From Haliotis rufescens (Eukaryota): 64,000 bases of DNA. This document shows, piece after piece, positions 8,350 to 59,070 of the stretch. The notes beneath the pieces are model-generated. The model worked only from the letters and a program-made list of their open reading frames with translations, was not told the DNA's origin and made no database searches. Position 1 is the first letter of the stretch. Each line of letters opens with the position of its first letter. The DNA is taken from assembly GCF_023055435.1 (NCBI RefSeq), contig NW_025963890.1, positions 62,558,001-62,622,000 on the forward strand, given 5' to 3'. Made by a program: the position numbers and the translations under genes.

Positions 8350-9798
8350 TTAACACCAGCCTGGACTCCATACACCGCCGTAGTATTCAGGGTTTGCTGC
8401 AGGAACACCAGCATTGCTCTGCGCCGGAACACGGGACTTCTTCCAGTTCTCCAGCCTCTTCTTCATCATGTCCACTAACTCAGGGTACGTCGCTGAGAGG
8501 TCGAAATGTTCAGTTGGATCTGCAGTAATGTTGTACAGCATGAAGGGAGGGAAGGTTTGGTTATCAGCTTCATAGACATCTTCGTCAATTCCCACATGTG
8601 GCAAAGGAGCCCAGCCATTGTGATCACCCGGACTCCCTTGCATGAGCTTGAGATCTCCGTACCTTACGGCAGCTGCTTCCCGCTCGTCATATATGTTGTA
8701 GACGAACTCATTCCGTTTGGTGGGCCCACCATTGATGAGCATGTCGTACTGGCTGACTCCGTCCATGTTGGGGTCTGTGTTCTCTCCACCAGCCAGCTCC
8801 ACAAACGTCGGGTACCAGTCCACAGCATGCATCATTCCAGTGTTAAGATAACCCGTCTTCTTCAGAAGGGTTTTACTGTAGATGAATCCTGTGCCTTTCG
8901 TTCCCCCTTCCCACAGAGTATTTTTAGCTCCTCGTAAAGGCAAGTTATTAGCAGCAAGAAATGTAGGACCGCCATTATCGGTTGTAAAGACTAACAAAAG
9001 ATTGTCCATGAGACCTTTGCCTTCTAAAGCCTTCGTAATGTTTCCCACAGCTTCATCCAAAGCACTCACCATTCCACAATAGATTCTTCTCTTTATGTTT
9101 TCTATGTTCTTGTACATGTTTTCATATTTAGCTGGAACTTGATGAGGTGTATGAACAGACTGGAATGGAAGGTATAGATAAAGTGGTTTACTTTTGTCGT
9201 GGTTTGTAATGATTTCAACAGCCCTGTTAGCAAACACATTTGCAGAATAGGTCCCATTGGCGTCTCTATATGCAGTCTTGTTGAGGTGAAAATCCAGTCC
9301 TACTTCACCTTTGACTTCCTTCATCTTTCTCAGGTGGGTAAAATAGTCCTCTGAACCAGTGTAAAATCCAAGATAGGAGTCAAAGCCTCTCTCTGTGGGT
9401 GTATATTTCCAGTTACAGAATCCAAGATGCCACTTCCCAACCATATGAGCAGCATAGCCGAGTTGTTTCAGTTTCTGTGGAATTGTTATTAGATTGGCTG
9501 GCATGTATTTCGCTGCGTCGTCGTCGATAACGCCATCCTGTAGTCCAGTGTGATAGGGGAAATATCCTGACATGAAGCAGTTTCTGGAGGGTGAACACAA
9601 AGGCTGTACGTAAGAAGAGTTGAGGATGACTCCAGCTTTGGCCAGTCTGTCCAGGTTAGGGGTGATCATTTGAGGGTTCCGAAACCCAACATCATTCCAG
9701 CCGAGGTCATCCGCGACAATGAATACAATGTGAGGTTTCTCAGCATACGCACAAGTGAAAAAAATCAGAACAAGGAACACAGTTGTTAAAAGATTCAT
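8350..9798 (-). CDS. ARSB: Arylsulfatase B-like sulfatase, intronless, signal peptide, 482 aa (copy A)
   Basis: Signal peptide MNLLTTVFLVLIFFTCAYA; PHIVFIVADDLG; FGly motif CSPSR; GKWHLG; SVH; TTDNGG; PLRGAKxTLWEGG. Start set at the ATG (9798) aligned with all paralogues. Confidence 0.95.
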   Translation of the reverse strand: MNLLTTVFLVLIFFTCAYAEKPHIVFIVADDLGWNDVGFRNPQMITPNLDRLAKAGVILNSSYVQPLCSPSRNCFMSGYFPYHTGLQDGVIDDDAAKYMPANLITIPQKLKQLGYAAHMVGKWHLGFCNWKYTPTERGFDSYLGFYTGSEDYFTHLRKMKEVKGEVGLDFHLNKTAYRDANGTYSANVFANRAVEIITNHDKSKPLYLYLPFQSVHTPHQVPAKYENMYKNIENIKRRIYCGMVSALDEAVGNITKALEGKGLMDNLLLVFTTDNGGPTFLAANNLPLRGAKNTLWEGGTKGTGFIYSKTLLKKTGYLNTGMMHAVDWYPTFVELAGGENTDPNMDGVSQYDMLINGGPTKRNEFVYNIYDEREAAAVRYGDLKLMQGSPGDHNGWAPLPHVGIDEDVYEADNQTFPPFMLYNITADPTEHFDLSATYPELVDMMKKRLENWKKSRVPAQSNAGVPAANPEYYGGVWSPGWC

Positions 9799-10357
9799 TT
9801 TGATTCTGCGTAATGCAAGGAGTGTGCTGCTATTTAACGTATTCTGACAGATAACATACATCGTGACGAACCTAGATCTTGCATTCCTCCCGGTGAGATA
9901 AAATACAACCTAATCTTTAAGTTCGAGATGTAGACCACTTTATTTATGTTGTTTTGAGCAAAAAATGCATTTACATTATCTATAATTACATTCAAAACAT
10001 ATTTTCATCGAATTGAAAGAACTCAATCAGCCAATTCTACTTTACCTGTGGGAATACTACATGCTTGTATCTCATGTATGTTCAATGCTATACATAAAGA
10101 TTGAACACGTTAAAGTCATTTGTAATGCGATTTGTAGTCCCAGCTTCGTTAGTCTTGGATGTTCTGCAATGCCTGTTCCAGTAAGACTTGTACAAAGTTA
10201 AACTCAGTACCTCACTGTTGGATATCTTGTTTAAGACAACGTAACCCGACCGACCATTCAATAGTGTTTCAGCAGCTGTTTGAAGACATGCAATTCTTTT
10301 CCTTGAAAGAAGAAGGCGACAATCTTTTTATACTTTTTCACTCCCACTCTTACACTT

Positions 10358-10592
10358 ACGCCGCACTCAGCAATATTCCAGCTATATGACGGCGGTCTGT
10401 AAATAATCGAGTCTGGACCAGACAATCCAGTGATTGACATCATGAGCATCGATCCACGCAATTAGGATACGGTGACATGCATCAACCAAGTTGTCGAGCC
10501 TGACCACCTGATCCCGTTTGTCGCCTCTTACGAGAAGCATAGTCGCCTTTTAGGACAAGCGTTGGTTGCAGAAGTACCTATTCTACCCCAGA
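10358..10592 (-). mobile_element. SINE family 1 (CCCGTGAAGATCC-headed, no tRNA boxes seen)
   Basis: Reverse complement of the element at 47968-48232. Other copies at ~11475-11655(+), 14645-14840(-), 19425-19632(+), 21770-21960(-), 35397-35530(+), 41160-41370(+). Confidence 0.85.
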
Positions 10593-13039: not shown

Positions 13040-13618
13040 TATATAATTTTCTTGTGCATGTTTTCATATTTAGGTGGAACAAGAGGTGCATGTACAGACT
13101 GGAATGGAAGGTACAGATAAAGTGGCTTACTGTTGTCAAGGTTCTCAATGATTTCAACAGCTCTGTCCGCAAAAATATTTGCAGAAGTGCACCAGAGTAA
13201 TATCCAAGATAGGAATCAAAGCCTCTCTCTGTGGGTGTATACCTCTCGTTACAGAATCCAAGATGCCACTTTCCAACCATGTGAGCATCATAACCAAGTT
13301 GTTTCAGTGTTTGTGGTATTGTTGTTAGATTGGCCGGCAGGTGTTTTGCTGTATTGACCAATATAACGCCATCTTGTAGTCCGGTGTAATAAGGGAAATA
13401 TCCCGACATGTCGAGCATAAAGGCTGGACGTAAGAAGAGTTGAGGATGACTCCAGCTTTGGCCAGTCTGTCCAAGTAAGGGGTGATCATTTGAGGGTTCC
13501 GAAATCCAACATCATTCAAGCCGAGGTCATCAGCGACTATAAATACAATGTGAGGTTTATCTGCACATTCACAGATAAGAAACGTCAGAAGAATAAAGAC
13601 AGCTCTTTGGAGATTCAT
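13040..13618 (-). pseudogene. Arylsulfatase B-like pseudogene, 5' half only
   Basis: MNLQRAVFILL..KPHIVFIVADDLGLND. A frameshifting deletion destroys CSPSR (reads LCSTC), a second deletion follows YSGA, and homology stops after KYENM. Confidence 0.92.
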
Positions 13619-14951
13619 TTTGCTTCTGCTCAATGTGGTACATTGTGCTTCCATTTAAAGGTTTCCAATAGATAACGTGATTTTCGTGACCTGCTTAGAG
13701 CATGAACTCTCTCTGTGTGAATATAAAAAAAAATTACTCTCAGCATTTCAACGACATTTGTTGTTGCCTAGCCACGGACTGTCTTACATTTTATGGGTGT
13801 TTCAAAGCAACAACTTCCACAAGTGCACTGTTAATGCTGTACAGGACACAAATCCTCAAACATTATTTCGTATATGTTGTAGAGGTACTGACCTCACTAT
13901 GGAGAAGAACAGCTGCCACTGGTACCTTTTCGTCAACTGTCAATATTACTTCACTACTGGCAGTATGATCGGTGTGTCTTCACAGAGTACATACAATTCA
14001 CAGGGGCACTTATTGCTCTTTCTTATACAAGGGTGTTTTAGAGTGAGTGAGTAGAGTTTACCACGCCGCTAAATAATTTGTGTCAGTTTGATGGGAGAAT
14101 AAAACCCTATGTAAAATAGGAAACACACTGGCTGGGTACGATGTTGATAAGCTACCAATAGTAATTCTCAGGGTGAATCTGCGATATGATCCCACGATCG
14201 TTATTTCGAGGCACGACAAAGGGACGTAAAGTTTGCCTTATTTGGCCAAATGTGATCCTGTCAAGAAAATGGGCATTTCTTCTCAAATGTAGACCTAGAC
14301 TAACACAATGTTAAATCTGTTAAATTAAGCCTGCATCCAGTTTGAAAACAGTAGTATAGAAGTGAGTAAGTGAGGTTTTACGCCACTTTTAGCACTATTC
14401 TAGTAATTGCAAGGCACTGGACACCAGAAATGGGCATCATAAATGTGTGGAATAAAACCGAATCTTTAAGGTGAAACTTTAACAACCTTATATTAGCAGA
14501 AAGAATTTGAGACAATTGTAATTAATACCATGTGGATTCTAAAAAAACGTGAATGATTGTGTGTGATTTTAGTACAGCAAAGTAAACACAAACAAACTCA
14601 GGACGAAGCTGAGATTCGAGACCACGTCCCCTTGGTTGTTTTGCAACTTTATTGTTTGTCTAATAAACTCCGTCCGGCTATATGACGGCCATCTGTAAAT
14701 AGTTGAGTCTGGACCAGACAATTCCATGATTGATATCATCATTAGCAACCAACTCAGCAGTATGGCGAACAGATCCTATTAGTCGCCTCTTTCACCATTC
14801 ATGAGTTCCTGAAGACCAATTCTAACAGGATCTTCACGGGGATGCACTTATCCATACATTCATCTATTATTTTTATTTATCTTCAAGGAATCACTAACAT
14901 GTTCGGATGCGAAAATTATATCTTGGGTGTACAATCTCAGCGTACTTTGTA

Positions 14952-16394
14952 TCAACACCACCCAGGACTCCATACACCGCCGTAGTATTTTGGGTTCGCT
15001 CTTGGTACTGGAGTAGGATCCTGGGCTGGGACACGGGTTTTCTTCCAGTTGTCCAACCTCTTCTTCATCATGTCCACTAGCTCAGGGTACTTGGCTGAGA
15101 GGTCGAAATGTTCAGTTGGATCTGCAGTAATGTTGTAGAGCATGAAGGGAGGGAAGGTTTGGTTATCAGCTTCATAGACACCTTCGTCAATTCCCAGATG
15201 TGGCAAAGGAGCCCAACCATTGTGAATTCCTGGACTTCCTTGCATGAGTTTGAGATCTCCATACCGTATTGCAGCTGCTTCCCGCTCATCGTAGATGTTG
15301 TAGACGAACTCATTCCGTTTGGAGGGTCCACCATTGATGAGCATGTCGTACTGACTGACTCCGTCCATGTTTGGGTCTGTGTTCTCTCCACCAGCCAGCT
15401 CCACAAACGTCGGGTACCAGTCCACAGCATGCATCATTCCAGTGTTGAGGTAGCCTGTCTTCTTCAGAAGGGTTTTACTGTAGATAAATCCTGTGCCTTT
15501 TGTTCCCCCTTCCCACAGAGTATTTTTGGCTCCTCGTAAAGGCAAGTTATTAGCAGCACCAAATGTGGGACCACCATTATCGGTTGTAAAGACTAGCAAA
15601 AGATTGTCCATGAGGCCTTTGTCTTCTAAAGCCTTCGTAATGTTTCCCACAGCTTCATCCAAAGCACTAACCATTCCACAATATACCCTTCTGTTTTCGG
15701 TTTCTATATTCTTGTACATGTTTTCATATTTAGGTGGCACTTGAAGAGGTCCATGTACAGACTGGAATGGAAGGTATAGATAAAGTGGCTTACTGTTGTC
15801 GTGGTTCTCAATGGTACTAACAGCTCTGTCTGCAAACACATTTGCAGAATAGGTCTCATTGGCGCTTCTGTTGATGGTCAAGTTGAAGCGAAAATCCAGC
15901 CCCACTTCATCGCTACTTTCCTGTCTTACGTGAGTATAGTAGTCCTCCATTCCAGAGTAGTATCCAAGATAGGAGTCAAAGCCTCTCTCTGTGGGTGTAT
16001 ACTTCTCGTTACAGAAGCCAAGATGCCACTTTCCAACCATGTGAGCATCATAGCCAAGTTGTTTCAATTTCTGTGGTATAGTTGTTAGATTGACCGGCAG
16101 GTGTTTTGCTGAGTTGACCAATACGACGCCATCTTGAAGTCCAGTGTGATAGGGGAAATATCCCGACATGAAGCAGTTTCTGGAGGGCGAGCACAGTGGC
16201 TGAACATATGAAGAGTTGAGGATGACTCCAGCTTTGGCAAGTCTGTCCAGGTTAGGGGTGATCATTTGAGGATTTATATATCCAACATCGTTCCAGCCGA
16301 GGTCATCAGCAACTATAAATATTATGTGAGGTTTCTCTGCACATTCACAGTAAACGAAAGTGAGAACAATAAAGACAGCTCTTTGGAGAGTCAT
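14952..16394 (-). CDS. ARSB: Arylsulfatase B-like sulfatase, intronless, signal peptide, 480 aa (copy B)
   Basis: Uninterrupted ORF from ATG 16394 (MTLQRAVFIVL). All S1 sulfatase motifs intact. Confidence 0.95.
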   Translation of the reverse strand: MTLQRAVFIVLTFVYCECAEKPHIIFIVADDLGWNDVGYINPQMITPNLDRLAKAGVILNSSYVQPLCSPSRNCFMSGYFPYHTGLQDGVVLVNSAKHLPVNLTTIPQKLKQLGYDAHMVGKWHLGFCNEKYTPTERGFDSYLGYYSGMEDYYTHVRQESSDEVGLDFRFNLTINRSANETYSANVFADRAVSTIENHDNSKPLYLYLPFQSVHGPLQVPPKYENMYKNIETENRRVYCGMVSALDEAVGNITKALEDKGLMDNLLLVFTTDNGGPTFGAANNLPLRGAKNTLWEGGTKGTGFIYSKTLLKKTGYLNTGMMHAVDWYPTFVELAGGENTDPNMDGVSQYDMLINGGPSKRNEFVYNIYDEREAAAIRYGDLKLMQGSPGIHNGWAPLPHLGIDEGVYEADNQTFPPFMLYNITADPTEHFDLSAKYPELVDMMKKRLDNWKKTRVPAQDPTPVPRANPKYYGGVWSPGWC

Positions 16395-16427
16395 TTTGCT
16401 TCTGCTCAATGTGGTCTATTGTGCTTC

Positions 16428-16464
16428 TATTTATAGGTTTCCAATAGATAAGGCACGTCGTGAC
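16428..16464 (-). promoter_or_regulatory. Putative core promoter of copy B: TATA box, CCAAT, GATA site (AGATAA) and CGTGAC motif
   Basis: TATAAATA 34-41 nt upstream of the ATG, AGATAA at 16446-51, CGTGAC at 16459-64. Equivalent motifs at the same spacing in the other copies (e.g. 23638-74, 44211-47, 52119-55, 59104-40, ~9831-67). Confidence 0.55.
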
Positions 16465-21629: not shown

Positions 21630-24600
21630 ATAGTTCTTACATAAACAAAATCAGGACGAAGCTGGAACTCGCTACCACGTTCGCAGGATTTTGGACTTTT
21701 ATGGAGGCAACTCTGCACTGCGAATTCGGCGCTAAGACGACCCGTCCCAAAGGATGTTTTACAACTTAATTGTTTGTTTGGTTAATGACGTAATCAGTGG
21801 TATTAGGGCTATATGACGGCCATAAGTAAATAATTAAGTCTGGACCAGACAATTCAATGACTAATGTCATCAGCATCAACCAACTCAGCAAGTATGACCA
21901 ACATATCCTGTCAGTCGCCTCTTACACCATTCAAGACTCATTCTAACAGGATCTTCACGGGGATGCACTTAAGGAAAACCAGGTAATATCTCAACTCAGT
22001 AACACATATCCATATATGCATCTATTACTTTTAATTTATCTTCAAGGAATCGACCAATCGGCCACGAAGTAGCAAGCGAACTTGTAATCTATTCCAACAC
22101 ATATCTCAGTAATTCCAATGCGAAAAATATATCTGGGTGTACAATCTCAGCGTACTTTGTATCAACACCACCCAGGACTCCATACACCGCCGTAGTATTT
22201 TGGGTTCGCTCTTGGTACTGGAGTAGGATCCTGGGCCGGGACACGGGTTTTCTTCCAGTTGTCCAGCCTCTTCTTCATCATGTCCACTAGCTCAGGGTAC
22301 TTGGCTGAGAGGTCGAAATGTTCAGTTGGATCTGCAGTAATGTTGTAGAGCATGAAGGGAGGGAATGTTTGGTTATCAGCTTCATAGACACCTTCGTCAA
22401 TTCCCAGATGTGGCAAAGGAGCCCAACCATTGTGAATTCCTGGACTCCCTTGGATGAGCTTGAAATCTCCGTACCTTATAGCAGCTGCTTCCTGTGCGTC
22501 ATAGATGTTGTAGACGAACTCATTTCGATTGGTGGGTCCACCATTGATGAGCATGTCGTACTGACTGACTCCGTCCATGTTGGGGTCTGTGTTCTCTCCA
22601 CCAGCCAGCTCCACAAATGTCGGGTACCAGTCCACAGCATGCATCATTCCAGTATTGATGTAGCCCATCTTCTTCAGAAGGGTTTTACTGTAGATGAATC
22701 CAGTGCCTTTCGTCCCCCCTTCCCACAGAGTATTTTTGGCTCCTCGTAAAGGCAAGTTATTAGCAGCAGCAAATGTGGGACCACCATTATCGGTTGTAAA
22801 GACTAACAAAAGATTGTCCATGAGACCTTTGTCTTCTAAAGCTTTAGTGATATTCCCAACAGCTTCGTCTAACGCACTCACCATTCCACAATAGACCCTT
22901 CTGCGTTTGGTTTCTATGTTCTTGTACATGTTTTCATATTTAGCTGGAACTTGAAGAGGTTGATGTACAGACTGGAATGGAAGGTATAGATAAAGTGGCT
23001 TACTGTTGTCGTGGTTCTCAATGATTTCAACAGCTCTGTCTGCAAACACATTTGCAGAATAGGTCTCATTTGACCTTCTGTTGATGGTCAAGTTGAAGCG
23101 AAAATCCAGCCCCACTTCATCGCTACTTTCCTGTCTCACGTGAGTATAATAGTCCTCAAAACCAGAGTAATATCCAAGATAGGAGTCAAAGCCTCTCTCT
23201 GTGGGTGTATACTTCTCGTTACAGAATCCAAGATGCCATTTTCCAACCATGTGAGTATCATAGCCAAGTTGTTTCAGTTTCTGTGGTATAGTTGTTAGAT
23301 TGGCCGGCAGGTGTTTCGCTGAGTTGACCGATACGACGCGATCCTGTAGTCCAGTGTGATAGGGGAAATATCCCGACATGAAGCAGCTTCTGGAGGGCGA
23401 GCACAGAGGCTGAACGTAAGAAGAGTTGAGGATGACTCCAGCTTTGGCAAGTCTGTCCAGGTTAGGGGTGATCATTTGAGGATTTATATATCCAACATCG
23501 TTCCAGCCGAGGTCATCAGCGACAATAAATACAATGTGAGGTTTCTCTGCACATTCACAGAAAACGAAAGTCAGAAGAATAAAGACAGCTCTTTGGGGAA
23601 TCATTTTGCTTGTGTTCAATGTGGTACATTGTGCTTCTATTTGTAGGTTTTCAAAAGATAACGCACGTCGTGACTAGCCTTGGGCATGCATTATTTCTGT
23701 GTGATTACCTGCTGCTACCGTTGTGGTATATATATATACCACAGAATCTACGCAGATGTTACATGACTTTTTTCACAAAGTCTGCAAGTGAAACGATAAC
23801 ACCTATAATACATGGAATTCTTCAATCTGAGATTTTTTGACGAAATAGGAAGAACTGGACAATGTTACTACTACTGAGCATCATTGTATTTCATATTAAG
23901 TTAAACATACAGTTCTCATATGTGTAATTGTGCTATGCGTTCATTCGCCCCAAATATACACAATAGCAGACAGAAATATATGTTATGTTATATACAAATT
24001 ATTTACACTCTTATCATTGTGTTAATTGTGTATATGAATGGGGCCTACAGAAGAGCTCTATACCTGGTAGTTGTTTATGTCATGGTTTATGTAGTGGACA
24101 TGTGGGCAGGACACGCTCACCTTTTCGCGAGTACCTAGTGTGATTACTATTTGATAGTTAATCATGAACACATCTTGTTTTGAGCGTCATTGTATTCTAT
24201 TACTAGGTTGTGATGTTTTGTTAAGCTTTGAAATAAATTAATTTAGAAGAAACATGCGTTTGGTGGGTTGTCCTGTATTGTGGTTGACCAGAAATAGACG
24301 TCACACATTGTGCTCATGTGTGCGTGACGAGCGAACGTTTTAGCCCCTCGACTACCCCACCAATGTAACAGCAACAGGAGGGTGATTTAAGAACAGAGGA
24401 AGACCTCTTTCAGAGACTCATCTGTGACAATATTCTGAAACTTCGTGAGTGCACTAACATGAATTATAGGGCCGGTTATGTGTTGCTCCTGAGACGTATT
24501 GATCAATTGTATTGCCTTTTTTATTGTAAACCTAAAACTTTGTATTTACATATAAATTATTGATTATTCATTGATCATTTGTGGCCATTTATTGATTTCA

Positions 24601-28904: not shown

Positions 28905-29066
28905 NNNNNNNNNNNNNNNNNNNNNNNNNNNNNNNNNNNNNNNNNNNNNNNNNNNNNNNNNNNNNNNNNNNNNNNNNNNNNNNNNNNNNNNNNNNNNNNN
29001 NNNNNNNNNNNNNNNNNNNNNNNNNNNNNNNNNNNNNNNNNNNNNNNNNNNNNNNNNNNNNNNNNN
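28905..29066. other. Assembly gap (N run)
   Basis: Run of N. Confidence 1.
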
Positions 29067-29769
29067 GGACAGGAAATACTGCTGATAGCCTCTGGTCAAC
29101 TCAGCCGCGCCACCGCAGAATGTTCGTCCAACTCTGCAGGGGGCATTCTCAGTGGCTTCAACCGCGCTGAAATGTTTTCGCCTTGCATCCAAGATGGTGG
29201 ACAAGTGAAATCGTATGAAATTTGGCTATTTTAGGTCCTATCTCTTTTTTGATTACCCAATAAAGTCAATTCATAGTTACACGGTTGTGAAGAAGCTTAC
29301 AACTTTATAAGACTTATTCATCTCATTCCAAAAAAGCTACTCGCGCTCACATAAAGTTGTGGTTATTATGTCACTGTTTTATTTCTTTAAAAATATATTA
29401 CATGTTCAACAATAACAATTAAGATGAACATTCAATTTCCGATATAAGTAAATGAATAAGTGTGTTTTACGCCACAATCAGTCAAAAACCAACGTTGTCC
29501 GGTCTGATGACACACAATCTACCAGGTAGCACATTGTGTACACCCTATCCCCCTTGACGTCTCCACTGTGGGTATTCCTGGGGACGAAAAGGCCCCATGT
29601 ACCTAGGAATTTCATCAATACATTCATGCGCGGCATTCTCTGCCTAAAGAAGATCATATAGTTAACATGCTAATCCAACTCGAACTACCATCCCGCTCAA
29701 GATGAATGTTTTATGTAACATCCAACAGGCCCACATTTACGCACGCACGCACGCGCACACACATATTTG

Positions 29770-32700
29770 GATTTACCAATCCCTGAATTGAGAAGACGTG
29801 CGTTACGAAGCTCCTCCAAGTCATCATCAATATCCGTATATGTCTGTGATATCATTACCCATCCAAAGCCGAATATACATTTATTGTGTTTTCTTGACAA
29901 CAAATGTTATAATTGGGATAACACTTTCTGAGTAAAGTACAGATTCTCGTACTTTCTTGGGTTGAGCCCCGTCCGGGATTTGAACCGACACTGTGAGTGA
30001 GGCACCCAATCGCCAGAACACAAAGTTGGCGATCTAACCCAGCCACCGAACCAAAAATGTTAGTCCAGATGACGTATACTTTGTGTACTCCTCTGACAAG
30101 AGAAAAATGGCACGGCTTCTATGACCGAAAGCTTTGAACCAACAATGCCTTTAAGAAAGTGGTCAACAGTAACACACATTATATTTGGATACCACTTTCT
30201 CAGTAAACTACATATTTTTAGGGTGGAGATAATAGACGTTGATGGTTGATTATCAATGGACAAATTAAAGCCAAAACTTAACTTATGAATGATTGGTAAT
30301 GGGAAATGGACAATGGGCAAACGGGAGGCGGGGTAATCAGCGCCATGCCAGTTATCTGTTGGCTTCCCTTGTTGCGTTCCCTTCTTTGCTATCTTTTTAC
30401 TTTTGTTGTTTTTACAGGTACAAATATATGTTCTCTGCCTCATAGCATTTAATAATATGCACCTGATGAAGGAGAAAGTATATATTCCGAAACGCAGTGT
30501 TCCTCCGTTGACATCCATAAATATTTTTCCTAGTGTGTATCAGTTCTTAATGCCCTTCAAAGAGTCAATCTAGCTTTGTTTTTAAATGTGGTGATATTTG
30601 CGTAGAATTTAATATGGTCATGCCTATATACATTTGGGTCTTTGTCTACATAAGCATTTGGATATACAATTTAGAGCTAAGGACATTGCTAATTCTGCAG
30701 GCATGAAGTACGCGTCATAGCAAGCTGTGATCTTTATTCATACTTTAGATATTCGTAATGGAGATCTGTAACTGAAGTTTACCGTAATCTTCCGCAACTC
30801 TCACCTCCTGACCAGTTGAACGTCTTTGTGCATTCAGATGCCATTGTAAAATTCCAGGCTGCCCCTCTTTCTGTGATGTTTTGACGGATGAAATCTATTG
30901 CGTTATAATAATCTCTGTTTGCTGATATATAATATGTACATGTTGTAAAATATTTACGATATTTTAAACGTGTAATTCGATGCATATGCAATGCAATGTG
31001 AACATAAGTGCGGATGCACGAAGGCGGTTATAGTCATAGTTATACTGCGATGGATGTAGGGGAATGGTAGGGAGGGTGTATGTATGTATGAAAGCACGAA
31101 TACCGATACATGAGGGCGGATATAGTTATAGTTCGATGGATGTTGGGGAATGGTGGGAGGATGGATTATGTATGAAAGCATGCGCATGGATCCATGATGG
31201 CTGACGTAGACATAATGGTGGGGAAAGAAGAATGTGATGTGTGTGTGTGTGTGCGTGCGTGCATGCGTGCATGCGTGCATGCGTTGTGATACGAGGGTTG
31301 GCGAACATGTTGTCAGATGATTGTGTGAGTAAGTTAAGTGGTTGAGGATGTGGCAGGTATGAGTATTGATACATGCAGACTTGGGGTTGGGGGACTGGTT
31401 GTGCCTGTGCTGAGGTCTTTTGTTTCACTCACTTATAGTGTTTTCTTTCACTCAAATACTGTTTTACGCATTTTAATGACTGCAACTGTAGTGACTCAAA
31501 GGTCATACTGGCCGGGCATTCAACATATCTACCCCAACTACATACGTAGCCATTTTTATGGTGTACNNNNNNNNNNNNNNNNNNNNNNNNNNNNNNNNNN
31601 NNNNNNNNNNNNNNNNNNNNNNNNNNNNNNNNNNNNNNNNNNNNNNNNNNNNNNNNNNNNNNNNNNNNNNNNNNNNNNNNNNNNNNNNNNNNNNNNNNNN
31701 NNNNNNNNNNNNNNNNNNNNNNNNNNNNNNNNNNNNNNNNNNNNNNATGTATCTTCGAGAGTCAGTAAGAAACTAGAAATAACTGCCTTTGTTCTGTAAA
31801 CCTCACCAAGTTTCAGCTTTCGCCTCTTCCTTTGTGGACTGAGGTTTCACATTTGTAAAATGATCTCTCTTATCTGTCTGTACCATCAACTTAACTGCCC
31901 TCACCCCCTGCAGTTTTCCCGTCCTATATTGCCAAGCAGTTGACCCACAAGGAGGAATACCGCCCTCCCTCAGTCCAGTGATACTGTGCCTAGCACAATA
32001 TGTTGGGGATACGTAGCCTTGCTGTGGGCAAACATTTTGTAACAATTTGGCAAACTTTGATATGTAAACAGCAAATATTATTCAGTTTTATTTCAACAAA
32101 AACGGAAAAAATCGGATCCTACTTATTTTGTGGATACCATAACAATAAATCAAGCCAATAGATCGTTTGAGCTGGCATGAATATAAAAAATAATTAGCAA
32201 GTCGATAGTCATAATTCCCTCTGTTGGTCCCACGTGAAATGTTGTTCATGAATAGAATAGATGGCTGATAGACGTTCGACCGAATAATATCATTTGCTAA
32301 CTTCAACTGTTCATCTAATTTCCATGAATGTATGTTACATAGTTCATATGTTCATGGGCTTCTTCACTGAATGTATAGTGTGGAGGACTACTTCACTTGA
32401 GGATAAGTAACATAAATAATGATGATAATTATGATAGTATTGCCATTATTATTCCTTCAGATTATTAAAAAAAAAGTTATTATGTTTTCATAGAGAGAAA
32501 GAGATATGGAGATTGTGAGATTATTTTTAGCATCGGAATTGTTAACATAATTCTTAAAGATATTATGTTTTGTTTGTTTGTTGTTAAATGCTGCACTCAG
32601 CAACGTAAGGATATTAAAACATTACATTTAGGTTCAGTTGTATTTTTATATTTGTATCATTTTGCAAATGTTACAGAGACCTGATAAGGGATATATAATC

Positions 32701-40189: not shown

Positions 40190-40483
40190 TCAACACCACC
40201 CAGGACTCCATACACCACCATAGTATTTTGGGTTCGCGTTGGGAACGGGACAATTGCTCTGTGCCGGAACACGGGTCTTCTTCCAGGTTTCCATCCTTTC
40301 CTTCATCATGTCCACTAACTCAGGGTACTTCGCTGAGAGGTCGAAGTGTTCAGTTGGATCTGCAGTAGTATGAAGGGAGGGAACATATGGTTATCAGTTT
40401 GATATACATCTTCGTCTCCCATATGTGGCAAATGAGCCCAACCATTATGATCCCCCGGACTCCCTTGTATGAGTTTTAGATCT
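40190..40483 (-). pseudogene. Arylsulfatase B-like 3' remnant (last ~95 codons)
   Basis: DLKLIQGSPGDHNGWA..TADPTEHFDLSAKYPELVDMMKE..ANPKYYGGVWSPGWC* with small deletions. Upstream part is replaced at a SINE fragment. Confidence 0.92.
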
Positions 40484-42734: not shown

Positions 42735-44177
42735 TCAACACCACCCAGGGTTCCATACATCGCCGTAGTATTTTGGGTTCGCTCTGGGAACATGAGTAGG
42801 ATCCTGGGCCGGGACACGGGTTTTCTTCCAGTTCTCCAGCCTCTTCTTCATCATGTCCACTAGCTCAGGGTACTTAGCTGAGAGGTCGAAGTGTTCAGTT
42901 GGATCTGCAGTAATGTTATACAGCATGAAGGGAGGAAACGTTTGGTTGTCAGCTTCATACACACGTTCATCAACTCCCAGATGTGGCAATGGAGCCCAAC
43001 CATTGTGATCTCCCGGACTCCCTTGCATGAGTTTGAGATCTCCGTACCTTATTGCAGCTGCTTCCCGCTCGTCATAGATGTTGTAGACGAACTCATTCCG
43101 TTTGGTGGATCCGCCATTGATGAGCATGTCGTACTGACTGACTCCGTCCATGTTGGGGTCTGTGCTCTCTCCACCAGCCAACTCCACCAATGTCGGATAC
43201 CAGTCCACAGCATGCATCATTCCAGTATTGAGGTAGCCCGTCTTCTTCAGAAGGGTTTTACTGTAGATGAATCCAGTGCCTTTCGTTCCCCCTTCCCACA
43301 GTGTATTTTTAGCTCCTCGTAAAGGCAAGTTATTAGAAGCTCTATACGTAGGACCACCATTGTCGGTTGTAAAGACCAACAACAGATTGTCCATGAGACC
43401 TTTGTCTTCTAATGCCTTGGTGATATTCCCAACAGCTTCGTCTAAGGCACTCACCATTCCACAATAAATCCTTCTGCTTTTGGTTTCTATGTTCTTGTAC
43501 ATGTTTTCATATTTAGGTGGAACTTCAAGAGGTGCATGTACAGACTGAAATGGAAGGTACAGATAAAGTGGCTTACTGTTGTCGTGGTTCTCAATGATTT
43601 CAACAGCCCGGCTCGCAAATACATATGCAGAATAGGTCCCATTTGCGTCTCTGTACACAGTATTGTTGTAGCGAAAATCCAGCCCCAATTCATTTTTATT
43701 TCCCTCTGACATGTGAGTAAAATACTCCTCCGCACCAGTGTAATATCCAAGATAGGAATCAAAGCCTCTCTCTGTGGGTGTATATTTCCAGTTACAGAAG
43801 CCAAGATGCCACTTCCCAACCATGTGAGCATCATAGCCGAGTTGTTTCAGTTTCTGTGGTATTGTTGTTAGATTGGCTGGCAGGTGTTTCGCTGAATTTG
43901 ACGAAACAACGCCATCTTGTAGTCCAGTGTGATAGGGGAAATATCCCGACATGAAGCAGTTTCTGGAGGGCGAACACAAAGGCTGAACGTAAGAAGAGTT
44001 GAGAATGACTCCCGCTTTGGCCAGTCTGTCCAGGTTGGGGGTGATCATTTGAGGGTTCCGAAATCCAACATCGTTCCAGCCGAGGTCATCAGCGACTATA
44101 AATATAATGTGAGGTTTCTCTGCACATTCACAGAAAACAAAAGTCAGAACAATACATAGAGCTTTTCGGAGACTCAT
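42735..44177 (-). CDS. ARSB: Arylsulfatase B-like sulfatase, intronless, signal peptide, 480 aa (copy D)
   Basis: Uninterrupted ORF MSLRKALCIVL..WNPGWC. All catalytic motifs intact. Confidence 0.95.
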   Translation of the reverse strand: MSLRKALCIVLTFVFCECAEKPHIIFIVADDLGWNDVGFRNPQMITPNLDRLAKAGVILNSSYVQPLCSPSRNCFMSGYFPYHTGLQDGVVSSNSAKHLPANLTTIPQKLKQLGYDAHMVGKWHLGFCNWKYTPTERGFDSYLGYYTGAEEYFTHMSEGNKNELGLDFRYNNTVYRDANGTYSAYVFASRAVEIIENHDNSKPLYLYLPFQSVHAPLEVPPKYENMYKNIETKSRRIYCGMVSALDEAVGNITKALEDKGLMDNLLLVFTTDNGGPTYRASNNLPLRGAKNTLWEGGTKGTGFIYSKTLLKKTGYLNTGMMHAVDWYPTLVELAGGESTDPNMDGVSQYDMLINGGSTKRNEFVYNIYDEREAAAIRYGDLKLMQGSPGDHNGWAPLPHLGVDERVYEADNQTFPPFMLYNITADPTEHFDLSAKYPELVDMMKKRLENWKKTRVPAQDPTHVPRANPKYYGDVWNPGWC

Positions 44178-50642: not shown

Positions 50643-52085
50643 TCAACACCAGCCTGGACTCCAGGCGCCGCCAAAGTATTTGGGGTTTGCGTTGGGAACG
50701 GGAGAACCGTCCTGCGATGGGACATGTGTCTTCTTCCAGTTCTCCAACCTCTTCTTCATCATGTCCACTAACTCGGGGTACTTCGCTGAAAGGTCGAAGT
50801 GTTCAGTTGGATCTGAAGTAATGTTGTATAGCATGAAGGGAGGGAATGTTTGGTTATCAGCTTGAGAGACGCCTTCATCAATTCCCAGATGTGGCAAAGG
50901 AGCCCAACCATTGTGATCTCCTGGATTTCCTTGCATGAGTTTGAGATCTCCGTACCGTATTGCAGCTGCTTCCCGCTCATCATAGATGTTGTAGACGAAC
51001 TCATTCCGTTTGGTGGATCCGCCATTGATGAGCATGTCATACTGACTAACTCCGTCCATTTTGGGATCTGTGTTCTCTCCACCAGCCAGCTCCACCAAAG
51101 TCGGGTACCAGTCCACAGCATGCATCATTCCAGTGTTGAGGTAGCCTGTCTTCTTCAGAAGTGTTTTACTGTAGATGAAAGCCGTGCCTTTCGTTCCCCC
51201 TTCCCACAGAGTATTCTTGGCTCCTCGTAAAGGCAAGTTATTAGCAGCAACAAATGTAGGACCGCCATTATCGGTTGTAAAGACTAACAATAGATTGTCC
51301 ATGAGGCCTTTGTCTTCTAAAGCCTTCGTAATGTTTCCCACAGCTTCGTCTAACGAACTCGCCATTCCACAATAGACCCTTCTGTTTAGATTTTCTATGT
51401 TCTTGTACAGGTTTTCATATTTTGAAGGAACTTCTAGAGGTATATGTACAGACTGGAATGGAAGGTATAGATAAAGTGGTTTACTATTGTCGTGGTTCTC
51501 GATGATTTCAACAGCTCTGTCCGTAAACACATTTGCAGAATAGGTTCCATTTGCGTTGCCATAGACAGTCTTATTGAAGTGAAAATCCAGGCCCACGTCA
51601 CCTCCTCGATCCTGTGACATGTGAGTAAAATACTCTTCATCACCGGAGTAATAGCCAAGATAGGTATCAAAGCCTCTCTCTGTGGGTGTATATTTCCAGT
51701 TACAGAAGCCAAGATGCCACTTCCCAACCATGTGAGCATCATAGCCGAGTTGTTTCAGTCTTTGTGGTATAGTTGTTAGGTTGGCTGGCAAGAATCTCGC
51801 TGCGTCTACCGGAATACCGCTGTCTTGTAGTCCAGTGTGATAGGGGAAATATCCTGACATGAAGCAGCTTCTGGAGGGCGAGCACATAGGCTGAACGTAT
51901 GAAGAGTTGAGGACGACTCCAGCTTTGGCCAGTCTGTCCAGGTTAGGGGTGATCATTTGAGGGTTCCGAAATCCAACATCGTTCCAGCCGAGGTCATCAG
52001 CGACTATAAATATAATGTGAGGTTTCTCTGCACACTCACAGATAACAAAAGTCAGAACAATAAGGACAGCTCCTCCGAGACTCAT
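50643..52085 (-). CDS. ARSB: Arylsulfatase B-like sulfatase, intronless, signal peptide, 480 aa (copy E)
   Basis: Start set at the aligned ATG 52085 (MSLGGAVLIVL). Motifs intact (MCSPSR, GKWH, SVH, TDNGG, AKNT). Confidence 0.95.
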   Translation of the reverse strand: MSLGGAVLIVLTFVICECAEKPHIIFIVADDLGWNDVGFRNPQMITPNLDRLAKAGVVLNSSYVQPMCSPSRSCFMSGYFPYHTGLQDSGIPVDAARFLPANLTTIPQRLKQLGYDAHMVGKWHLGFCNWKYTPTERGFDTYLGYYSGDEEYFTHMSQDRGGDVGLDFHFNKTVYGNANGTYSANVFTDRAVEIIENHDNSKPLYLYLPFQSVHIPLEVPSKYENLYKNIENLNRRVYCGMASSLDEAVGNITKALEDKGLMDNLLLVFTTDNGGPTFVAANNLPLRGAKNTLWEGGTKGTAFIYSKTLLKKTGYLNTGMMHAVDWYPTLVELAGGENTDPKMDGVSQYDMLINGGSTKRNEFVYNIYDEREAAAIRYGDLKLMQGNPGDHNGWAPLPHLGIDEGVSQADNQTFPPFMLYNITSDPTEHFDLSAKYPELVDMMKKRLENWKKTHVPSQDGSPVPNANPKYFGGAWSPGWC

Positions 52086-55750: not shown

Positions 55751-55818
<68 letters not shown>

Positions 55819-56513: not shown

Positions 56514-56753
56514 TACGTTTCAGGTAAGGTTATTACATCAAAGGGAAGCTTTGTCATACCTTGTCCTTTGTGTTTGTTCACTGTTGAATGTATATGTTTC
56601 ACAAAACTTGTAACCCAATGCGTCTGTGTCTGGTTCGATTTGATTTTAAAATAAATAGTTTTCCCTATTTGAAGACAAATGAGGTTGATGCGGTAAGGAC
56701 TCAATTTGACAAGTAGGTGTGACAACCCGTATTTTGAACATCAATGTAGTGTT

Positions 56754-57582
56754 AATAGAGAATACTACACTTATTCTCGATAGCGAGGTCAGATACCATA
56801 GAAAGTGCACGAGATTCGAAAGATTGCTATCTAACGAGAATGAGTGTGGTATCTTATTTATTACCTAAATATATGTGTATATATTAAAATATGTATTTAA
56901 GTGTAGATACATAACGACTTTCTTACGTTAACAGACCAAACTGAAACCGGTTGTAAATCTGGTTGGGCATGTGTAAATCTCACAGCGGCGTTTTTGCGCT
57001 AGAGATGAACGTTCATTCATGAACTAACGATTTCGGAAGCAATGTCACAAAATACGCTTCGAATGAGGACACTGATGACACAACCGGAGCATCCAACGTA
57101 AGTCAAAGATATCTGTCCAGATAGTTTAGCTGACTTCATGTCACCACGCTTAACATTAACACGTTAAATCAAATTGAAGTCGCGAAAGTAATCGGGTGCG
57201 TCACGCTCGATAGGGACCCTTGATAAAGATATATCGGAAGACGTACATTGCATATGGATACAGCTCGATTATATAATGTCTGCAGTAGTTCTATGCATGA
57301 CTAATATTGAATGCAAAGCGAGTTGATGCGTGTACCTTGTTTGGTTTGATAAAGAGTGTGTAAATGTCTGTCGCTTTCATGAGATTCCTTCAGTTCTGCC
57401 TTGTAGTTAAACAAGTGAATGACGTCTCGTGTTTTTTTTATGAATGAAAAAAGTAGTTCCGGTGTGACAGAGGTCACGGTTATCCAATCAAAAGGAATAA
57501 AACGAGGACAACCGTGTACGACACACGTGTGACGTACGGATTTAATGTGTAACCATCTCTATCTTCACCACGTGGGTAATAA
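56754..57582. mobile_element. ~830-bp insertion in the 3' flank of copy F, possibly a Crypton-like non-autonomous element
   Basis: Absent from the paralogous 3' flank (~8300-8320). No ordinary TIRs, but offset inverted pairs: ACACTTATTCTCG/CGAGAATGAGTGT near the left end, and TTATTACC (~56858) with terminal GGTAATAA. Confidence 0.5.
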
Positions 57583-57622
57583 ACGTATTTATTTGTGAGG
57601 GAGTGTCTGTTTGAAATAGTCA

Positions 57623-59070
57623 TTAACACCAGCCTGGACTCCATACACCGCCGTAGTATTTTGGGTTCGCTGCAGGAATACTAGCATTGTTCTGCGCCGG
57701 AACACGGGACTTCTTCCAGTTCTCCAGTCTCTTCTTCATCATATCCACTAACTCAGGGTACGTGGCTGAGAGGTCGAAATGTTCAGTTGGATCTGCAGTT
57801 ATGTTGTATAGCATGAAGGGAGGGAACTTCTGGTTATCAGCTTGATAAACACGTTCATCAATTCCCAGATGTGGCAAAGGAGCCCAACCATTGTGATCTC
57901 CCGGACTTCCTTGTATGAGTTTGAGATCTCCGTACCGTATTGCAGCTGCTTCCTCCTCGTCATAGATGTTGTAGACGAACTCATTCCGTTTGGTGGGTCC
58001 GCCATTGATGAGCATGTCGTACTGACTGACTCCGTCCATGTTGGGGTCTGTGTTCTCTCCACCAGCTAGCTCCACCAAAGTCGGGTTCCAGTCCACAGCA
58101 TGCATCATTCCAATGTTAAGGTAGCCCGTCTTCTTCAGAAGGGTTTTACTGTAGATGAACCCAGTTCCCTTCGTTCCCCCTTCCCAGAGAGTAGCTTTAG
58201 CTCCTCGTCAAGGCAAGTTATTAGAAGCTTTATACGTAGGACCACCATTATCGGTTGTAAAGACCAACAATAGGTTGTCCATGAGACCTTTGTCTTCTAA
58301 TGCCTTAGTGATATTCCCAACAGCTTCGTCTAACGCACTCACCATTCCACAATAGACCCTTCTGCGTTTGGTTTCTATGTTCTTGTACATGTTTTCATAT
58401 TTAGGTGGAACTTCCAGAGGTTCATGTACAGACTGGAATGGAAGGTATAGATAAAGTGGCTTACTGTTGTTGTGGCCCTCAATGAATTCAACAGCCCTGT
58501 TAGCAAACACATACGCAGAGTAGGTCCCATTGGCCTCTCTATAGGCAATCTTGTTTAAGTGAAAATCCAATCCGACTTCACCTTGGGGATCCTTTAACAT
58601 GTGAGTAAAATAGTCCTCTGCACCAGAGTAATGACCAAGATAGGTGTCAAAGCCTCTCTCTGTGGGTGTATATTTCCAGTTACAGAAGCCAAGGTGCCAT
58701 TTCCCAACCATGTGAGCATCATAGCCAAGTTGTTTCAGTTTCTGTGGTAGTGTTGTCAGGTTGGCTGGCAGGAATTTTGCTGCGTCTGTCTGAATAACGC
58801 CATCTTGAAGCCCGGTGTGATAGGGGAAATAACACGACATAAAACAGTTTCGGGAGGGCGAACACAAAGGCTGGACGTAAGAAGAGTTGAGGATGACTCC
58901 AGCTTTGGCCAGTCTGTCCAGGTTAGGGGTGATCATTTGAGGGTTCCTATATCCAACATCGTTCCAGCCGAGGTCATCAGCGACAATAAATACAATATTA
59001 GGTTTCTCCATACATTCACAGATAACAAAAGTCATAAAAGAATAATACATACAGCTTTTTGGAGACCCAT
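57623..59070 (-). pseudogene. Full-length, recently disabled arylsulfatase B-like gene (copy F)
   Basis: A 4-nt insertion in the signal peptide gives MGLQKAVCIILL*. TTA>TGA nonsense at 58208-10 in NNLP[L]RG. The rest is colinear and in frame with the paralogues. Confidence 0.9.

What the first reader, a model, noticed from the sequence alone, without database searches (positions are those of the whole stretch)
8350..59070. Residues flanking the active site are hypervariable while the catalytic core is fixed: candidate substrate-specificity diversification
Seen in copies A/B/C/D/E/F. The residue after the catalytic His in SVH-x-P is T/G/Q/A/I/E, different in every copy. YxG-x-E is S/M/F/A/D/A. 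GPT[FY]-x-A is L/G/A/R/V/K. The loop after GLQD is GVIDDD/GVVLVN/RVVSVN/GVVSSN/SGIPVD/GVIQTD, and the loop after YxTH also varies. DD, CSPSR, K-W-H, H, DN and K are invariant, and long C-terminal stretches are nearly identical. Sister copies B and C differ at these codons by multi-base changes (GGA vs CAA; ATG vs TTT). Inference: positive selection on the sugar-binding pocket, giving each paralogue a different sulfate-ester target.
Basis: partly seen in the sequence, partly recalled or inferred. Interest (0 to 1): 0.78.

Follow-up and report, generated by a model that had tools for sequence, protein, structure and literature searches.

The report
Abalone sulfatase array with hypervariable pocket sites
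A tandem array of abalone sulfatase genes keeps its catalytic machinery fixed while about ten codons, several right next to catalytic residues, change faster than neutral, which fits a set of digestive enzymes evolving different substrate preferences.

Summary
The window holds six intronless ARSB-like S1 sulfatase genes. Five are open; F has one in-frame TGA. Both N gaps lie between copies C and D, in no copy. The genome (an abalone, matching named Haliotis rufescens records) has 40 full-length copies, 37 of them open; 17 form the window's clade.

The catalytic residues I checked never vary. Ten codons (B numbering 97, 98, 154, 161, 164, 166, 220, 239, 284, 395) show 19% pairwise identity against 91% elsewhere.

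My own codon-model code gives M2a vs M1a 2ΔlnL 65.8 with six partition trees, M8 vs M7 91.9 and M8 vs M8a 58.5 (ω about 3-4 in 2-4% of sites; the rest about 0.15). Three null simulations gave at most 0.9. Two further clades repeat the signal at 283/284. A tree-free pairwise test agrees.

Gene conversion is pervasive but does not explain the signal.

Pocket location is shown only indirectly, because no coordinates were available. Different substrates per copy is untested. Verdict: diversifying selection is supported. This is a new case of a known evolutionary pattern.

The parts
8350..9798 (-). Copy A (locus L016): open intronless ARSB-like S1 sulfatase gene. The likely start is the Met of MNLLTTV; the ORF extends upstream to 9861.
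   Evidence: ORF list. Pfam PF00884 E 4.6e-51 plus PF14707. Alignment.
14952..16394 (-). Copy B (L001), the reference for numbering. Codon 1 = 16407-16409; the likely start Met is codon 6; Cys73 is the formylglycine site. Hot codons: 97 = 16119-16121, 98 = 16116-16118, 154 = 15948-15950, 164 = 15918-15920, 220 = 15750-15752, 239 = 15693-15695, 284 = 15558-15560, 296 = 15522-15524, 395 = 15225-15227.
   Evidence: AlphaFold2 model pLDDT 95.5. TM 0.94 to human ARSB 1FSU.
22162..23604 (-). Copy C (L002). It is B's nearest relative overall (81 nt differences), but codons 226-259 (22844-22943) are nearly identical to F.
   Evidence: Conversion tract: 2 differences to F against 16 to B, of 102 nt.
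42735..44177 (-). Copy D (L008), open.
50643..52085 (-). Copy E (L014), open. The ORF continues upstream to 52307; the homologous Met is at 52083-52085.
57623..59080 (-). Copy F (L017), a probable pseudogene. It has an in-frame TGA at 58208-58210 (codon 291), no Met at the homologous start, and changes at otherwise conserved residues (PHI to PNI, SGY to SCY, WYP to WNP).
   Evidence: Sequence read. Alignment. One TGA reported by the genome search.
13045..13633 (-). Frameshifted N-terminal half of a further copy (a dead fragment between A and B).
   Evidence: Three tblastn pieces in different frames, 80-83% identity to B residues 1-235. ORF pieces.
40193..40482 (-). C-terminal fragment of a further copy.
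   Evidence: tblastn to B residues 385-485, 70-83% identity.
2368..2545 (-). Remnant that joins the first 38 and last 26 residues of a copy (internal deletion).
   Evidence: tblastn.
28905..31746 (.). Spacer stretch that holds the two assembly gaps (28905-29066 and 31567-31746). It contains no sulfatase homology.
   Evidence: N runs and tblastn hit list.

Best explanation
The window is the middle of a tandem array of single-exon, signal-peptide-bearing, formylglycine-dependent S1 sulfatases of the ARSB type in an abalone genome. The array grows and decays by duplication, gene loss and gene conversion.

All copies keep the sulfate-hydrolysing core: the two Asp and the Asp/Asn metal ligands, the Cys that becomes formylglycine, Arg, Lys/His, His and Lys. 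Purifying selection holds about 96% of the protein at ω about 0.15.

About 10-17 codons are driven to change faster than synonymous sites (ω about 3-5). They lie in loops: 94-99 after GLQD, 154, 161-167, 220 (His+1), 238/239, 283/284 (after DNGG), 296 (Lys+1) and 395. Nearly every copy carries its own combination.

The most likely reason is selection for different leaving-group (sugar) recognition, giving a repertoire of secreted digestive sulfatases for the many sulfate-ester positions of dietary algal polysaccharides.

Shown here: the array, the fixed core, the fold, ω above 1 at these sites, the gene conversion, and a read pattern compatible with transcription of the family. Inferred: that the sites contact substrate, that the specificities differ, and the digestive role.
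For: Family and fold.
- Pfam PF00884 plus PF14707 in every copy.
- Best solved relative is human ARSB, E 1e-115.
- The AlphaFold2 model (pLDDT 95.5) superposes on 1FSU at TM 0.94/0.91, rmsd 2.2 A.
- The next-best matches are galactose-4-sulfate carrageenan sulfatases.
- Nine catalytic residues are invariant in 40 of 40 copies.
- FGE-domain exons are present at two loci.

Expansion.
- 40 full-length matches in the genome, 37 without stops. 17 of them (85-100% identical) sit within about 160 kb around the window.

Selection in the 17-copy clade (my own code).
- NG86 dS 0.33 and dN 0.062. dS is roughly flat along the gene.
- M0 ω is 0.22.
- M2a vs M1a 2ΔlnL is 78.2 on a single tree and 65.8 on 6 partition trees. 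ω2 is 3.9-4.8 for 1.8-2.5% of sites.
- M8 vs M7 is 91.9 and M8 vs M8a is 58.5.
- Posterior above 0.9 at sites 97, 98, 154, 161, 164, 166, 220, 239, 284 and 395.
- Per-site tests at the gene-average synonymous rate leave 97, 154, 284 and 395 significant after Bonferroni correction.
- Three simulated M1a data sets gave LRT 0.42, 0.0 and 0.86.

- Sites called in clades 2 and 3, then tested in clade 1: ω 1.99 (CI 1.32-2.61), p 0.0014.
- Clade 2 (6 copies): LRT 17.1, sites 238, 239, 283, 284. Clade 3 (13 copies): LRT 17.7, sites 94, 283, 284.
- Tree-free test, 8 non-overlapping pairs: pN at hot sites 0.33 against pS 0.21, Fisher p 9e-6. The 4 pairs without window copies: p 6e-4.

Pocket.
- Sites 220 and 296 are the residues after catalytic His219 and Lys295.
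- In the crystal structure of a 4-O-sulfatase the equivalents (Ser264, Asn357) are listed around the catalytic centre, and Asn117 (FGly+21, about site 94) docks to substrate (PMC6581707, passages).
- In PfS1_19B, Phe103 (Cys77+26, about site 99) forms the -1 subsite shelf (PMC6923384, passages).
- All hot sites fall in loops or turns of the model.

Expression and diet.
- Contigs of three runs guessed to be RNA cover the CDS and 3' flank (14677-16321) at depths of tens to thousands. They leave 16420-16823 empty, where a DNA-like run has depth 4-18.
- In a scallop, 4 of 7 ARSB-like genes were found in the digestive-gland proteome (PMC5159873, passages).
Against: - No distance to the formylglycine could be measured. 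For 97/98, 154, 161-166, 284 and 395, pocket contact rests on offsets from anchor residues in distant homologues and on loop location.
- With a site-specific synonymous rate, the per-site test is weak. Only 220, 284, 395, 164 and 239 of the ten hot sites reach p below 0.05; 97 is at 0.06, and 98, 154 and 161 do not reach p below 0.1. Sites 30, 100 and 465, outside the hot set, also do.
- Gene conversion is pervasive: PHI p at most 0.001, and AICc is still improving at 6 segments. One tract (C from F) carries hot sites 238/239, so some 'repeated' changes are copied alleles.
- In the tree-free test the excess is modest (ratio 1.56). Two of the 8 pairs are near 1 and one is below 1 (B-C 1.08, L011-E 1.13, L012-L013 0.75).
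- Branch lengths were fixed from M0, and the code is mine, not codeml or HyPhy.
- Double-base changes within codons (GGA/CAA, ATG/TTT) may inflate ω in models that allow only single steps.
- The RNA status of the runs is a guess by the tool. Contigs at 95-99% identity cannot be assigned to one paralogue.
- No enzyme assay exists for any copy.
Confidence: 0.6

Rival explanations
1. Relaxed constraint. The variable positions are unconstrained surface-loop residues evolving neutrally (ω about 1). Unmodelled gene conversion among tandem copies and multi-base mutations then push the estimates above 1.
For: - Recombination is strong (PHI p at most 0.001; AICc falls from 14524.8 to 14119.3 with 6 segments).
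- All hot sites are in loops.
- FEL with a free synonymous rate is only marginal at most sites.
- The pairwise ratio is 1.56, and one of the 8 pairs is below 1.
- The M1a/M2a neutral class already holds 14-15% of sites.
Against: - M8 vs M8a (null ω = 1) gives 58.5.
- Confidence intervals exclude 1 for site sets chosen on independent data (ω 2.28, CI 1.99-2.99; ω 1.99, CI 1.32-2.61).
- The tree-free test needs no genealogy and still gives p 9e-6, and p 6e-4 without window copies.
- The same codons recur in three clades.
- Null simulations give LRT at most 0.9.
Confidence: 0.17
2. Diversifying selection is real but is not about which sulfate ester is cut. It could reflect escape from dietary or microbial sulfatase inhibitors, different pH or salt optima, oligomer interfaces, or glycan or processing sites.
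For: - Nothing here measures substrate preference.
- Site 395 lies in a low-confidence C-terminal loop, and 238/239 lie at a helix start. Neither is next to a catalytic residue in sequence.
Against: - The strongest sites include His+1 (220), and 283/284 five to six residues after the metal ligands. Lys+1 (296) is also variable, though it was not called (FEL p 0.09).
- The literature on S1 sulfatases states that the conserved machinery does not discriminate substrates and that leaving-group subsites do (PMC9096561, passages).
- An algal diet offers many ester positions.
Confidence: 0.15
3. A decaying array. Most copies are redundant or on the way to pseudogenes, and the variation is early degeneration.
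For: - F and L015 each carry one in-frame TGA.
- There are three dead fragments in the window alone.
- There is no clear 1:1 orthologue in H. rubra for most copies (best identity 0.87-0.91).
Against: - 15 of the 17 clade copies and 37 of the 40 genomic copies are open.
- ω is 0.15 outside the hot sites, and leaving out the two copies with stops changes nothing.
- Catalytic residues are invariant in 40 of 40 copies.
- The read pattern is compatible with transcription.
Confidence: 0.05

Closest known systems
Human arylsulfatase B (N-acetylgalactosamine-4-sulfatase, PDB 1FSU)
   Same: Best sequence match among solved structures (E 1e-115). The model superposes at TM 0.94, rmsd 2.2 A, 43% identity. 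All ten active-site residues listed for 1FSU (named in PMC5159873) have conserved counterparts.
   Different: - ARSB is a single lysosomal gene. Here there are 40 full-length single-exon copies in tandem arrays.
- The positions equal to ARSB W115/P116, S172, 179-185, E243, N262, L306/A307, W319 and C447 (mapping) are the hypervariable ones, so the ARSB pocket is not conserved.
- From memory, not from a call: ARSB staples several of these loops with disulfides.
Molluscan digestive-gland ARSB-like sulfatases (scallop, sea hare; PMC5159873)
   Same: The paper describes ARSB-like duplicates in molluscs: 7 in the scallop genome (4 in the hepatopancreas proteome) and 16 in Aplysia. The authors hypothesise adaptation to diverse algae and different specificities (passages).
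   Different: That paper gives no codon-level test and points to the divergent C-terminal region. Here the count is 40, the copies are intronless and tandem, and the signal sits at about 10 named codons, mostly in the N-terminal catalytic domain.
Bacterial S1_19 carrageenan galactose-4-sulfatases (PfS1_19A/B, ZgCgsA; PDB 6BIA, 6PSM, 9HH2)
   Same: These are the second-best structural matches (TM about 0.82). Their substrates are algal sugar 4-sulfates. Specificity comes from subsites outside the conserved sulfate site (PMC6923384 and PMC9096561, passages).
   Different: 27-29% identity. They are bacterial and sit as single genes in polysaccharide utilisation loci. Their diversity arises across species and subfamilies, not as one animal's tandem paralogues.
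Tandem families under diversifying selection at binding sites (a general pattern in digestive, venom, detoxification and immune gene families; recalled, not from a call)
   Same: Birth-and-death array, a fixed scaffold, ω above 1 confined to a few ligand-facing loop residues, and gene conversion between copies.
   Different: My searches found no report of this pattern for sulfatases.

Membership tests
S1 (formylglycine-dependent) sulfatases, Pfam PF00884 | Sulfatase domain match above the curated cut-off | tested here: met
   166-201 bits against a cut-off of 25 in all six window copies (F in its N-terminal piece). PF14707 Sulfatase_C is over its 30.9-bit cut-off in 5 of 6 (E scores 30.2).
S1 (formylglycine-dependent) sulfatases, Pfam PF00884 | C/S-x-P-x-R signature with the Cys to be converted | tested here: met
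   C73, P75 and R77 are invariant in 40 of 40 copies. The motif is CSPSR, or CTPSR in L010 and L015.
S1 (formylglycine-dependent) sulfatases, Pfam PF00884 | Metal ligands (DD ... DN) and the Lys/His, His and Lys sulfate-binding residues | tested here: met
   D35, D36, D277, N278, H219 and K295 are invariant in 40 of 40 copies. GKWH (K127, H129) is invariant in 24 of 24 copies.
S1 (formylglycine-dependent) sulfatases, Pfam PF00884 | Two-domain alkaline-phosphatase-like fold | tested here: met
   Model pLDDT 95.5, pTM 0.94. TM 0.94 to 1FSU; 483 PDB chains at E up to 0.001, and every chain listed is a sulfatase.
S1 (formylglycine-dependent) sulfatases, Pfam PF00884 | Conversion of Cys to formylglycine, and sulfate-ester hydrolysis | not testable with these tools
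   Only the prerequisite was checked: FGE-domain (PF03781) exons at two loci, over the cut-off.
ARSB orthologue (GalNAc-4-sulfatase) | One-to-one orthology with vertebrate ARSB | tested here: not met
   40 full-length single-exon paralogues. Sources name them arylsulfatase B-, I- or J-like.
ARSB orthologue (GalNAc-4-sulfatase) | Conserved non-catalytic pocket residues, and GalNAc-4-sulfate as substrate | tested here: inconclusive
   The positions aligned to ARSB S172, E243, A307, W319 and others vary among copies. The substrate was not assayed, and pocket membership of these ARSB residues was not verified with coordinates.
Genes under site-specific positive selection | A site class with ω above 1 by nested likelihood tests, robust to recombination and to how the sites were chosen | tested here: met
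   M2a/M1a 65.8, M8/M7 91.9, M8/M8a 58.5 with partition trees. Independent copies and clades. Tree-free test. Null simulations. The code is my own and branch lengths were fixed.

The most novel reading that the evidence does not exclude
The abalone runs a repertoire system for enzymes: a birth-and-death array in which a handful of specificity codons act as hypervariable positions on a frozen catalytic scaffold. Short gene-conversion tracts move these specificity alleles between copies (as in the C/F tract that carries 238/239), creating new combinations. The array would then explore substrate space combinatorially, much as variable-region gene families do. The ten codons would amount to a natural map of the specificity determinants of ARSB-type sulfatases.
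Probability: 0.2. Interest if true: 0.75.

Novelty: new member of a known kind. Interest (0 to 1): 0.58.

Why it matters
What decides the substrate of an S1 sulfatase is still largely unknown, and animal enzymes acting on algal sulfated polysaccharides are barely characterised. This array points to about ten positions, on a scaffold with a solved human homologue, that nature has varied under selection while keeping catalysis intact. That gives a short, testable list for swap mutagenesis and for engineering sulfatases that remodel fucoidan, carrageenan or glycosaminoglycans. It also adds sulfatases to the enzyme families that expanded with macroalgal grazing. Finally, it suggests that crude 'abalone sulfatase' preparations are mixtures of many isoenzymes; that such preparations are sold is recalled, not from a call.

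Tried and rejected
- First structure prediction, from six near-identical copies, failed (pLDDT 32). I repeated it with 65 diverse named homologues.
- I looked for model or PDB coordinates on the script machine and found none.
- Literature search for ARSB pocket residues led nowhere useful. PMC7404199 (passages) and PMC10972148 (passages) give no contact list. PMC3633052 (passages) lists only the most conserved pocket. The review PMC9096561 (passages) keeps the contact residues in figures. A PDB-code search found nothing further. The GALNS structure paper is not held.
- Supplementary files were not opened. Those of PMC6923384 and PMC6581707 (contact figures) and of PMC5159873 (accessions) may bear on the pocket mapping.
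- Rejected: that the conserved C-terminal block is only young or homogenised. Within-clade dS there is 0.15-0.43.
- Rejected: that a gap breaks a copy.
- Rejected: that the overlapping 143-aa plus-strand ORFs inside each gene are genes. They are shadows of the conserved CDS.
- Orthologue test. I hoped to see hot sites conserved between species' orthologues. Clade-1 copies have no clear 1:1 partner among the H. rubra cluster representatives, and the tree is poorly resolved. The one clear pair (L018/P0010, 93.8% identical) differs at 2 of 10 hot sites.
- Script slips: an IQ-TREE thread error (fixed) and a NaN from tiny negative transition probabilities (diagnosed, fixed). In one search I indexed Lys/His one residue off (126/128 instead of 127/129).
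- Searches found no paper reporting positive selection in abalone or other mollusc sulfatases. This holds for that library only.

Full report
WHAT IS THERE

The window has six full-length sulfatase ORFs on the minus strand, 7-19 kb apart. It also has three dead fragments, at 2368-2545, 13045-13633 and 40193-40482. Each full copy is a single uninterrupted ORF of about 480 codons. Each has an N-terminal hydrophobic leader followed by EKPHI(I/V)FIVADDLGWND. Each matches Pfam Sulfatase (PF00884, 166-201 bits) and Sulfatase_C.

The two assembly gaps (28905-29066 and 31567-31746) lie in the spacer between C and D. tblastn finds no sulfatase homology between 23619 and 40193. No copy is therefore affected; only the C-D distance is uncertain.

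Copy F has an in-frame TGA at 58208-58210 where the others have Leu. It lacks the homologous start Met and has several changes at otherwise fixed residues. I treat it as a pseudogene. The stop was not checked against reads.

CONTEXT

The window is G000:C112:62558001-62622000 of a 1.33-Gb animal genome. A six-frame search with copy B finds 40 full-length matches: 37 without stops and 3 with one TGA. The tool states that these counts are lower bounds.

- Seventeen copies at 85-100% identity lie within about 160 kb around the window, all on the same strand.
- Seven copies at about 70% identity follow downstream.
- Further arrays lie on four other contigs, and a single copy on a fifth.
- Weaker, exon-sized matches elsewhere (C334) suggest that intron-containing relatives also exist. 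The expanded family may therefore descend from a retrocopy; this is inference.

The best database hits are 'arylsulfatase B-like' proteins of Haliotis. Two loci are 100% identical to records named H. rufescens. The organism is therefore an abalone, most likely the red abalone.

FGE-domain exons, needed to make formylglycine, occur at two loci.

THE OBSERVATION

At the ten hottest codons the mean pairwise identity among the 17 copies is 0.19, against 0.91 for the rest of the protein. 16 of the 17 copies have a unique ten-site combination. Nine catalytic residues are invariant in 40 of 40 copies, and GKWH in 24 of 24.

IS IT SELECTION?

Within the 17-copy clade, dS is 0.33 and dN is 0.062. dS is fairly even along the gene (0.15-0.48). 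The conserved stretches are therefore constrained, not merely recent.

Recombination is real:
- PHI observed 0.539 against a permuted 0.599 ± 0.007, p at most 0.001.
- Trees from thirds of the gene disagree.
- In an exhaustive segment search, AICc falls from 14524.8 (1 segment) to 14119.3 (6 segments) and is still improving.
- Codons 226-259 of C differ from F at 2 of 102 nt, but from its overall nearest copy B at 16 of 102.

I therefore wrote a Goldman-Yang-type codon likelihood (F3x4 frequencies, branch lengths in synonymous units). I fitted M0 per segment, then ran site models with segment-specific trees.

| Test | Result |
|---|---|
| M0 ω, single tree | 0.22 |
| M2a vs M1a, single tree | 2ΔlnL 78.2 |
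| M2a vs M1a, six trees | 2ΔlnL 65.8; ω2 3.9; 2.5% of sites |
| M8 vs M7 | 91.9 |
| M8 vs M8a | 58.5; ω 3.0; 3.8% of sites |
| Three data sets simulated under fitted M1a, same trees | LRT 0.42, 0.00, 0.86 |
| Six window copies alone, M2a vs M1a | 35.5 |

Sites with posterior above 0.9 under M8 are 97, 98, 154, 161, 164, 166, 220, 239, 284 and 395.

Per-site likelihood tests at the gene-average synonymous rate give p below 0.05 at 11 sites. Sites 97, 154, 284 and 395 survive Bonferroni correction over 459 codons. With a free site-specific synonymous rate the power is low, and only eight sites reach p below 0.05, among them 220, 284 and 395.

CONTROLS FOR ASCERTAINMENT AND GENEALOGY

I therefore ran four controls.

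1. I masked those six copies and tested the same 15 alignable sites in the other 11. Result: ω 2.28 (CI 1.99-2.99), LRT against ω = 1 of 37.0, with the rest of the gene at 0.15.
2. I called sites in two other clades without using clade 1. Six copies of the 70% clade give LRT 17.1, with sites 238, 239, 283 and 284. Thirteen copies of a clade on other contigs give LRT 17.7, with sites 94, 283 and 284. Those five sites, tested in clade 1, give ω 1.99 (CI 1.32-2.61, p 0.0014).
3. The ratio is 1.56, Fisher p 9e-6. Two pairs are near 1 and one is below 1. The four pairs without any window copy give p 6e-4.
4. Leaving out the two copies with stops changes nothing.

Remaining caveats are fixed branch lengths, residual recombination within segments, conversion copying hot-site alleles, and double-base codon changes.

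WHERE ARE THE SITES?

Copy B aligns to human ARSB without gaps around most sites. The mapping is:

| Site in B | Human ARSB residue |
|---|---|
| 97/98 | W115/P116 |
| 154 | S172 |
| 161-167 | 179-185 |
| 220 | E243, directly after catalytic H242 |
| 239 | N262 |
| 283/284 | L306/A307, five and six residues after D300/N301 |
| 296 | W319, directly after K318 |
| 395 | C447 |

A model built from 65 diverse homologues is confident (pLDDT 95.5). It matches 1FSU at TM 0.94, rmsd 2.2 A. All hot sites fall in loops, turns or a helix start. Site 395 lies in the least confident C-terminal loop.

No tool returns coordinates, so the distance test could not be run. The indirect support is as follows.
- Residues at +1 of two catalytic residues cannot be far from the sulfate site. 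This follows from chain geometry and is inference.
- A crystal structure of a chondroitin 4-O-sulfatase lists His263+1 (Ser264) and Lys356+1 (Asn357) among the residues around the catalytic centre. Asn357 is placed on the pocket rim, binding longer substrates. Asn117 (FGly+21) docks to the disaccharide (PMC6581707, passages).
- In PfS1_19B, Phe103 (Cys77+26) is part of the -1 subsite shelf (PMC6923384, passages). Mapping by offset to site 99 is my inference.
- A review states that the conserved machinery does not discriminate substrates and that leaving-group recognition does (PMC9096561, passages).

EXPRESSION AND ROLE

Contigs of three runs that the tool guesses to be RNA cover the CDS and about 280 nt of its 3' flank (14677-16321). 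One contig matches the 3' flank without any difference. The same runs leave 16420-16823 empty, whereas a DNA-like run covers it at depth 4-18. This is compatible with transcription of the family. It does not prove RNA, and it cannot assign reads to one paralogue.

In a scallop, 4 of 7 ARSB-like genes were detected in the digestive-gland proteome, and the authors proposed adaptation to diverse algae (PMC5159873, passages). A digestive role in abalone is therefore plausible but inferred.

COMPARISON AND NOVELTY

These are bona fide S1 sulfatases of the ARSB type by sequence, motif and fold. They are not ARSB orthologues: there are 40 copies, they are intronless, and the non-catalytic ARSB positions are not conserved.

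Duplication of ARSB-like genes in molluscs and the diet hypothesis are in print. My three searches found no codon-level evidence or named hot spots for any mollusc sulfatase. The evolutionary pattern itself (tandem family, frozen scaffold, ω above 1 at a few ligand-facing sites, conversion between copies) is a familiar one. I rate this a new member of a known kind. Its practical value is a short list of candidate specificity determinants.

VERDICT

- Observation: confirmed.
- Positive selection: supported (about 0.8).
- Full interpretation (pocket residues giving different substrates in digestive enzymes): about 0.6.

Noticed in passing
window 15306-15485 in copy B (codons about 309-368), and the same stretch in every copy: Between the 17-copy clade and the 70%-identity clade, synonymous divergence is saturated (above 2) along most of the gene but only 0.24-0.57 in this stretch. 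This points to an old conversion between the two arrays or to unusual constraint on synonymous sites.
   Followed up: partly
window 22844-22943 (copy C) against copy F: Conversion tract: C differs from F at 2 of 102 nt but from B at 16 of 102. Over the whole CDS, C-B is 81 differences and C-F is 176. The tract carries hot sites 238/239.
   Followed up: yes
window 58208-58210 and 59040-59080 (copy F): F has one in-frame TGA and no Met at the homologous start. A public record named arylsulfatase J-like (P0013, 374 aa) matches it at 99.7%. That gene model evidently skirts the stop.
   Followed up: partly
window 14602-14803 and 16824-17227: Two flanking stretches of copy B are very high-copy repeats. 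Summed contig depth reaches about 1e4 to 1e6 in all four runs, with many internal joints.
   Followed up: no
window 55257-56527, 59490-63912 and 20039-20446: Transposon ORFs between the sulfatase copies: a Tc1/mariner-like transposase in two pieces with a (GA)n-type simple repeat; a non-LTR element with gag-like, endonuclease and reverse-transcriptase ORFs; and a reverse-transcriptase fragment (read by eye).
   Followed up: no
window 8506-8937, 15108-15539, 22318-22749, 42891-43322, 50850-51230 (plus strand): A 126-143-aa ORF antisense to each sulfatase gene recurs in five copies. It lies inside the most conserved part of the CDS, so it is most simply a shadow of that conservation.
   Followed up: no
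L001-L017 against H. rubra proteins P0002, P0003, P0005, P0007, P0008: Clade-1 copies have no clear one-to-one partner in H. rubra (best identity 0.87-0.91, no higher than between paralogues). In a poorly supported tree, some H. rubra sequences nest inside the clade and others sit at its base. This suggests rapid turnover or concerted evolution of the array. Only cluster representatives were available.
   Followed up: partly
L010 and L015 (same genome, outside the window): Two copies have CTPSR instead of CSPSR at the formylglycine motif. This still fits C-x-P-x-R.
   Followed up: no
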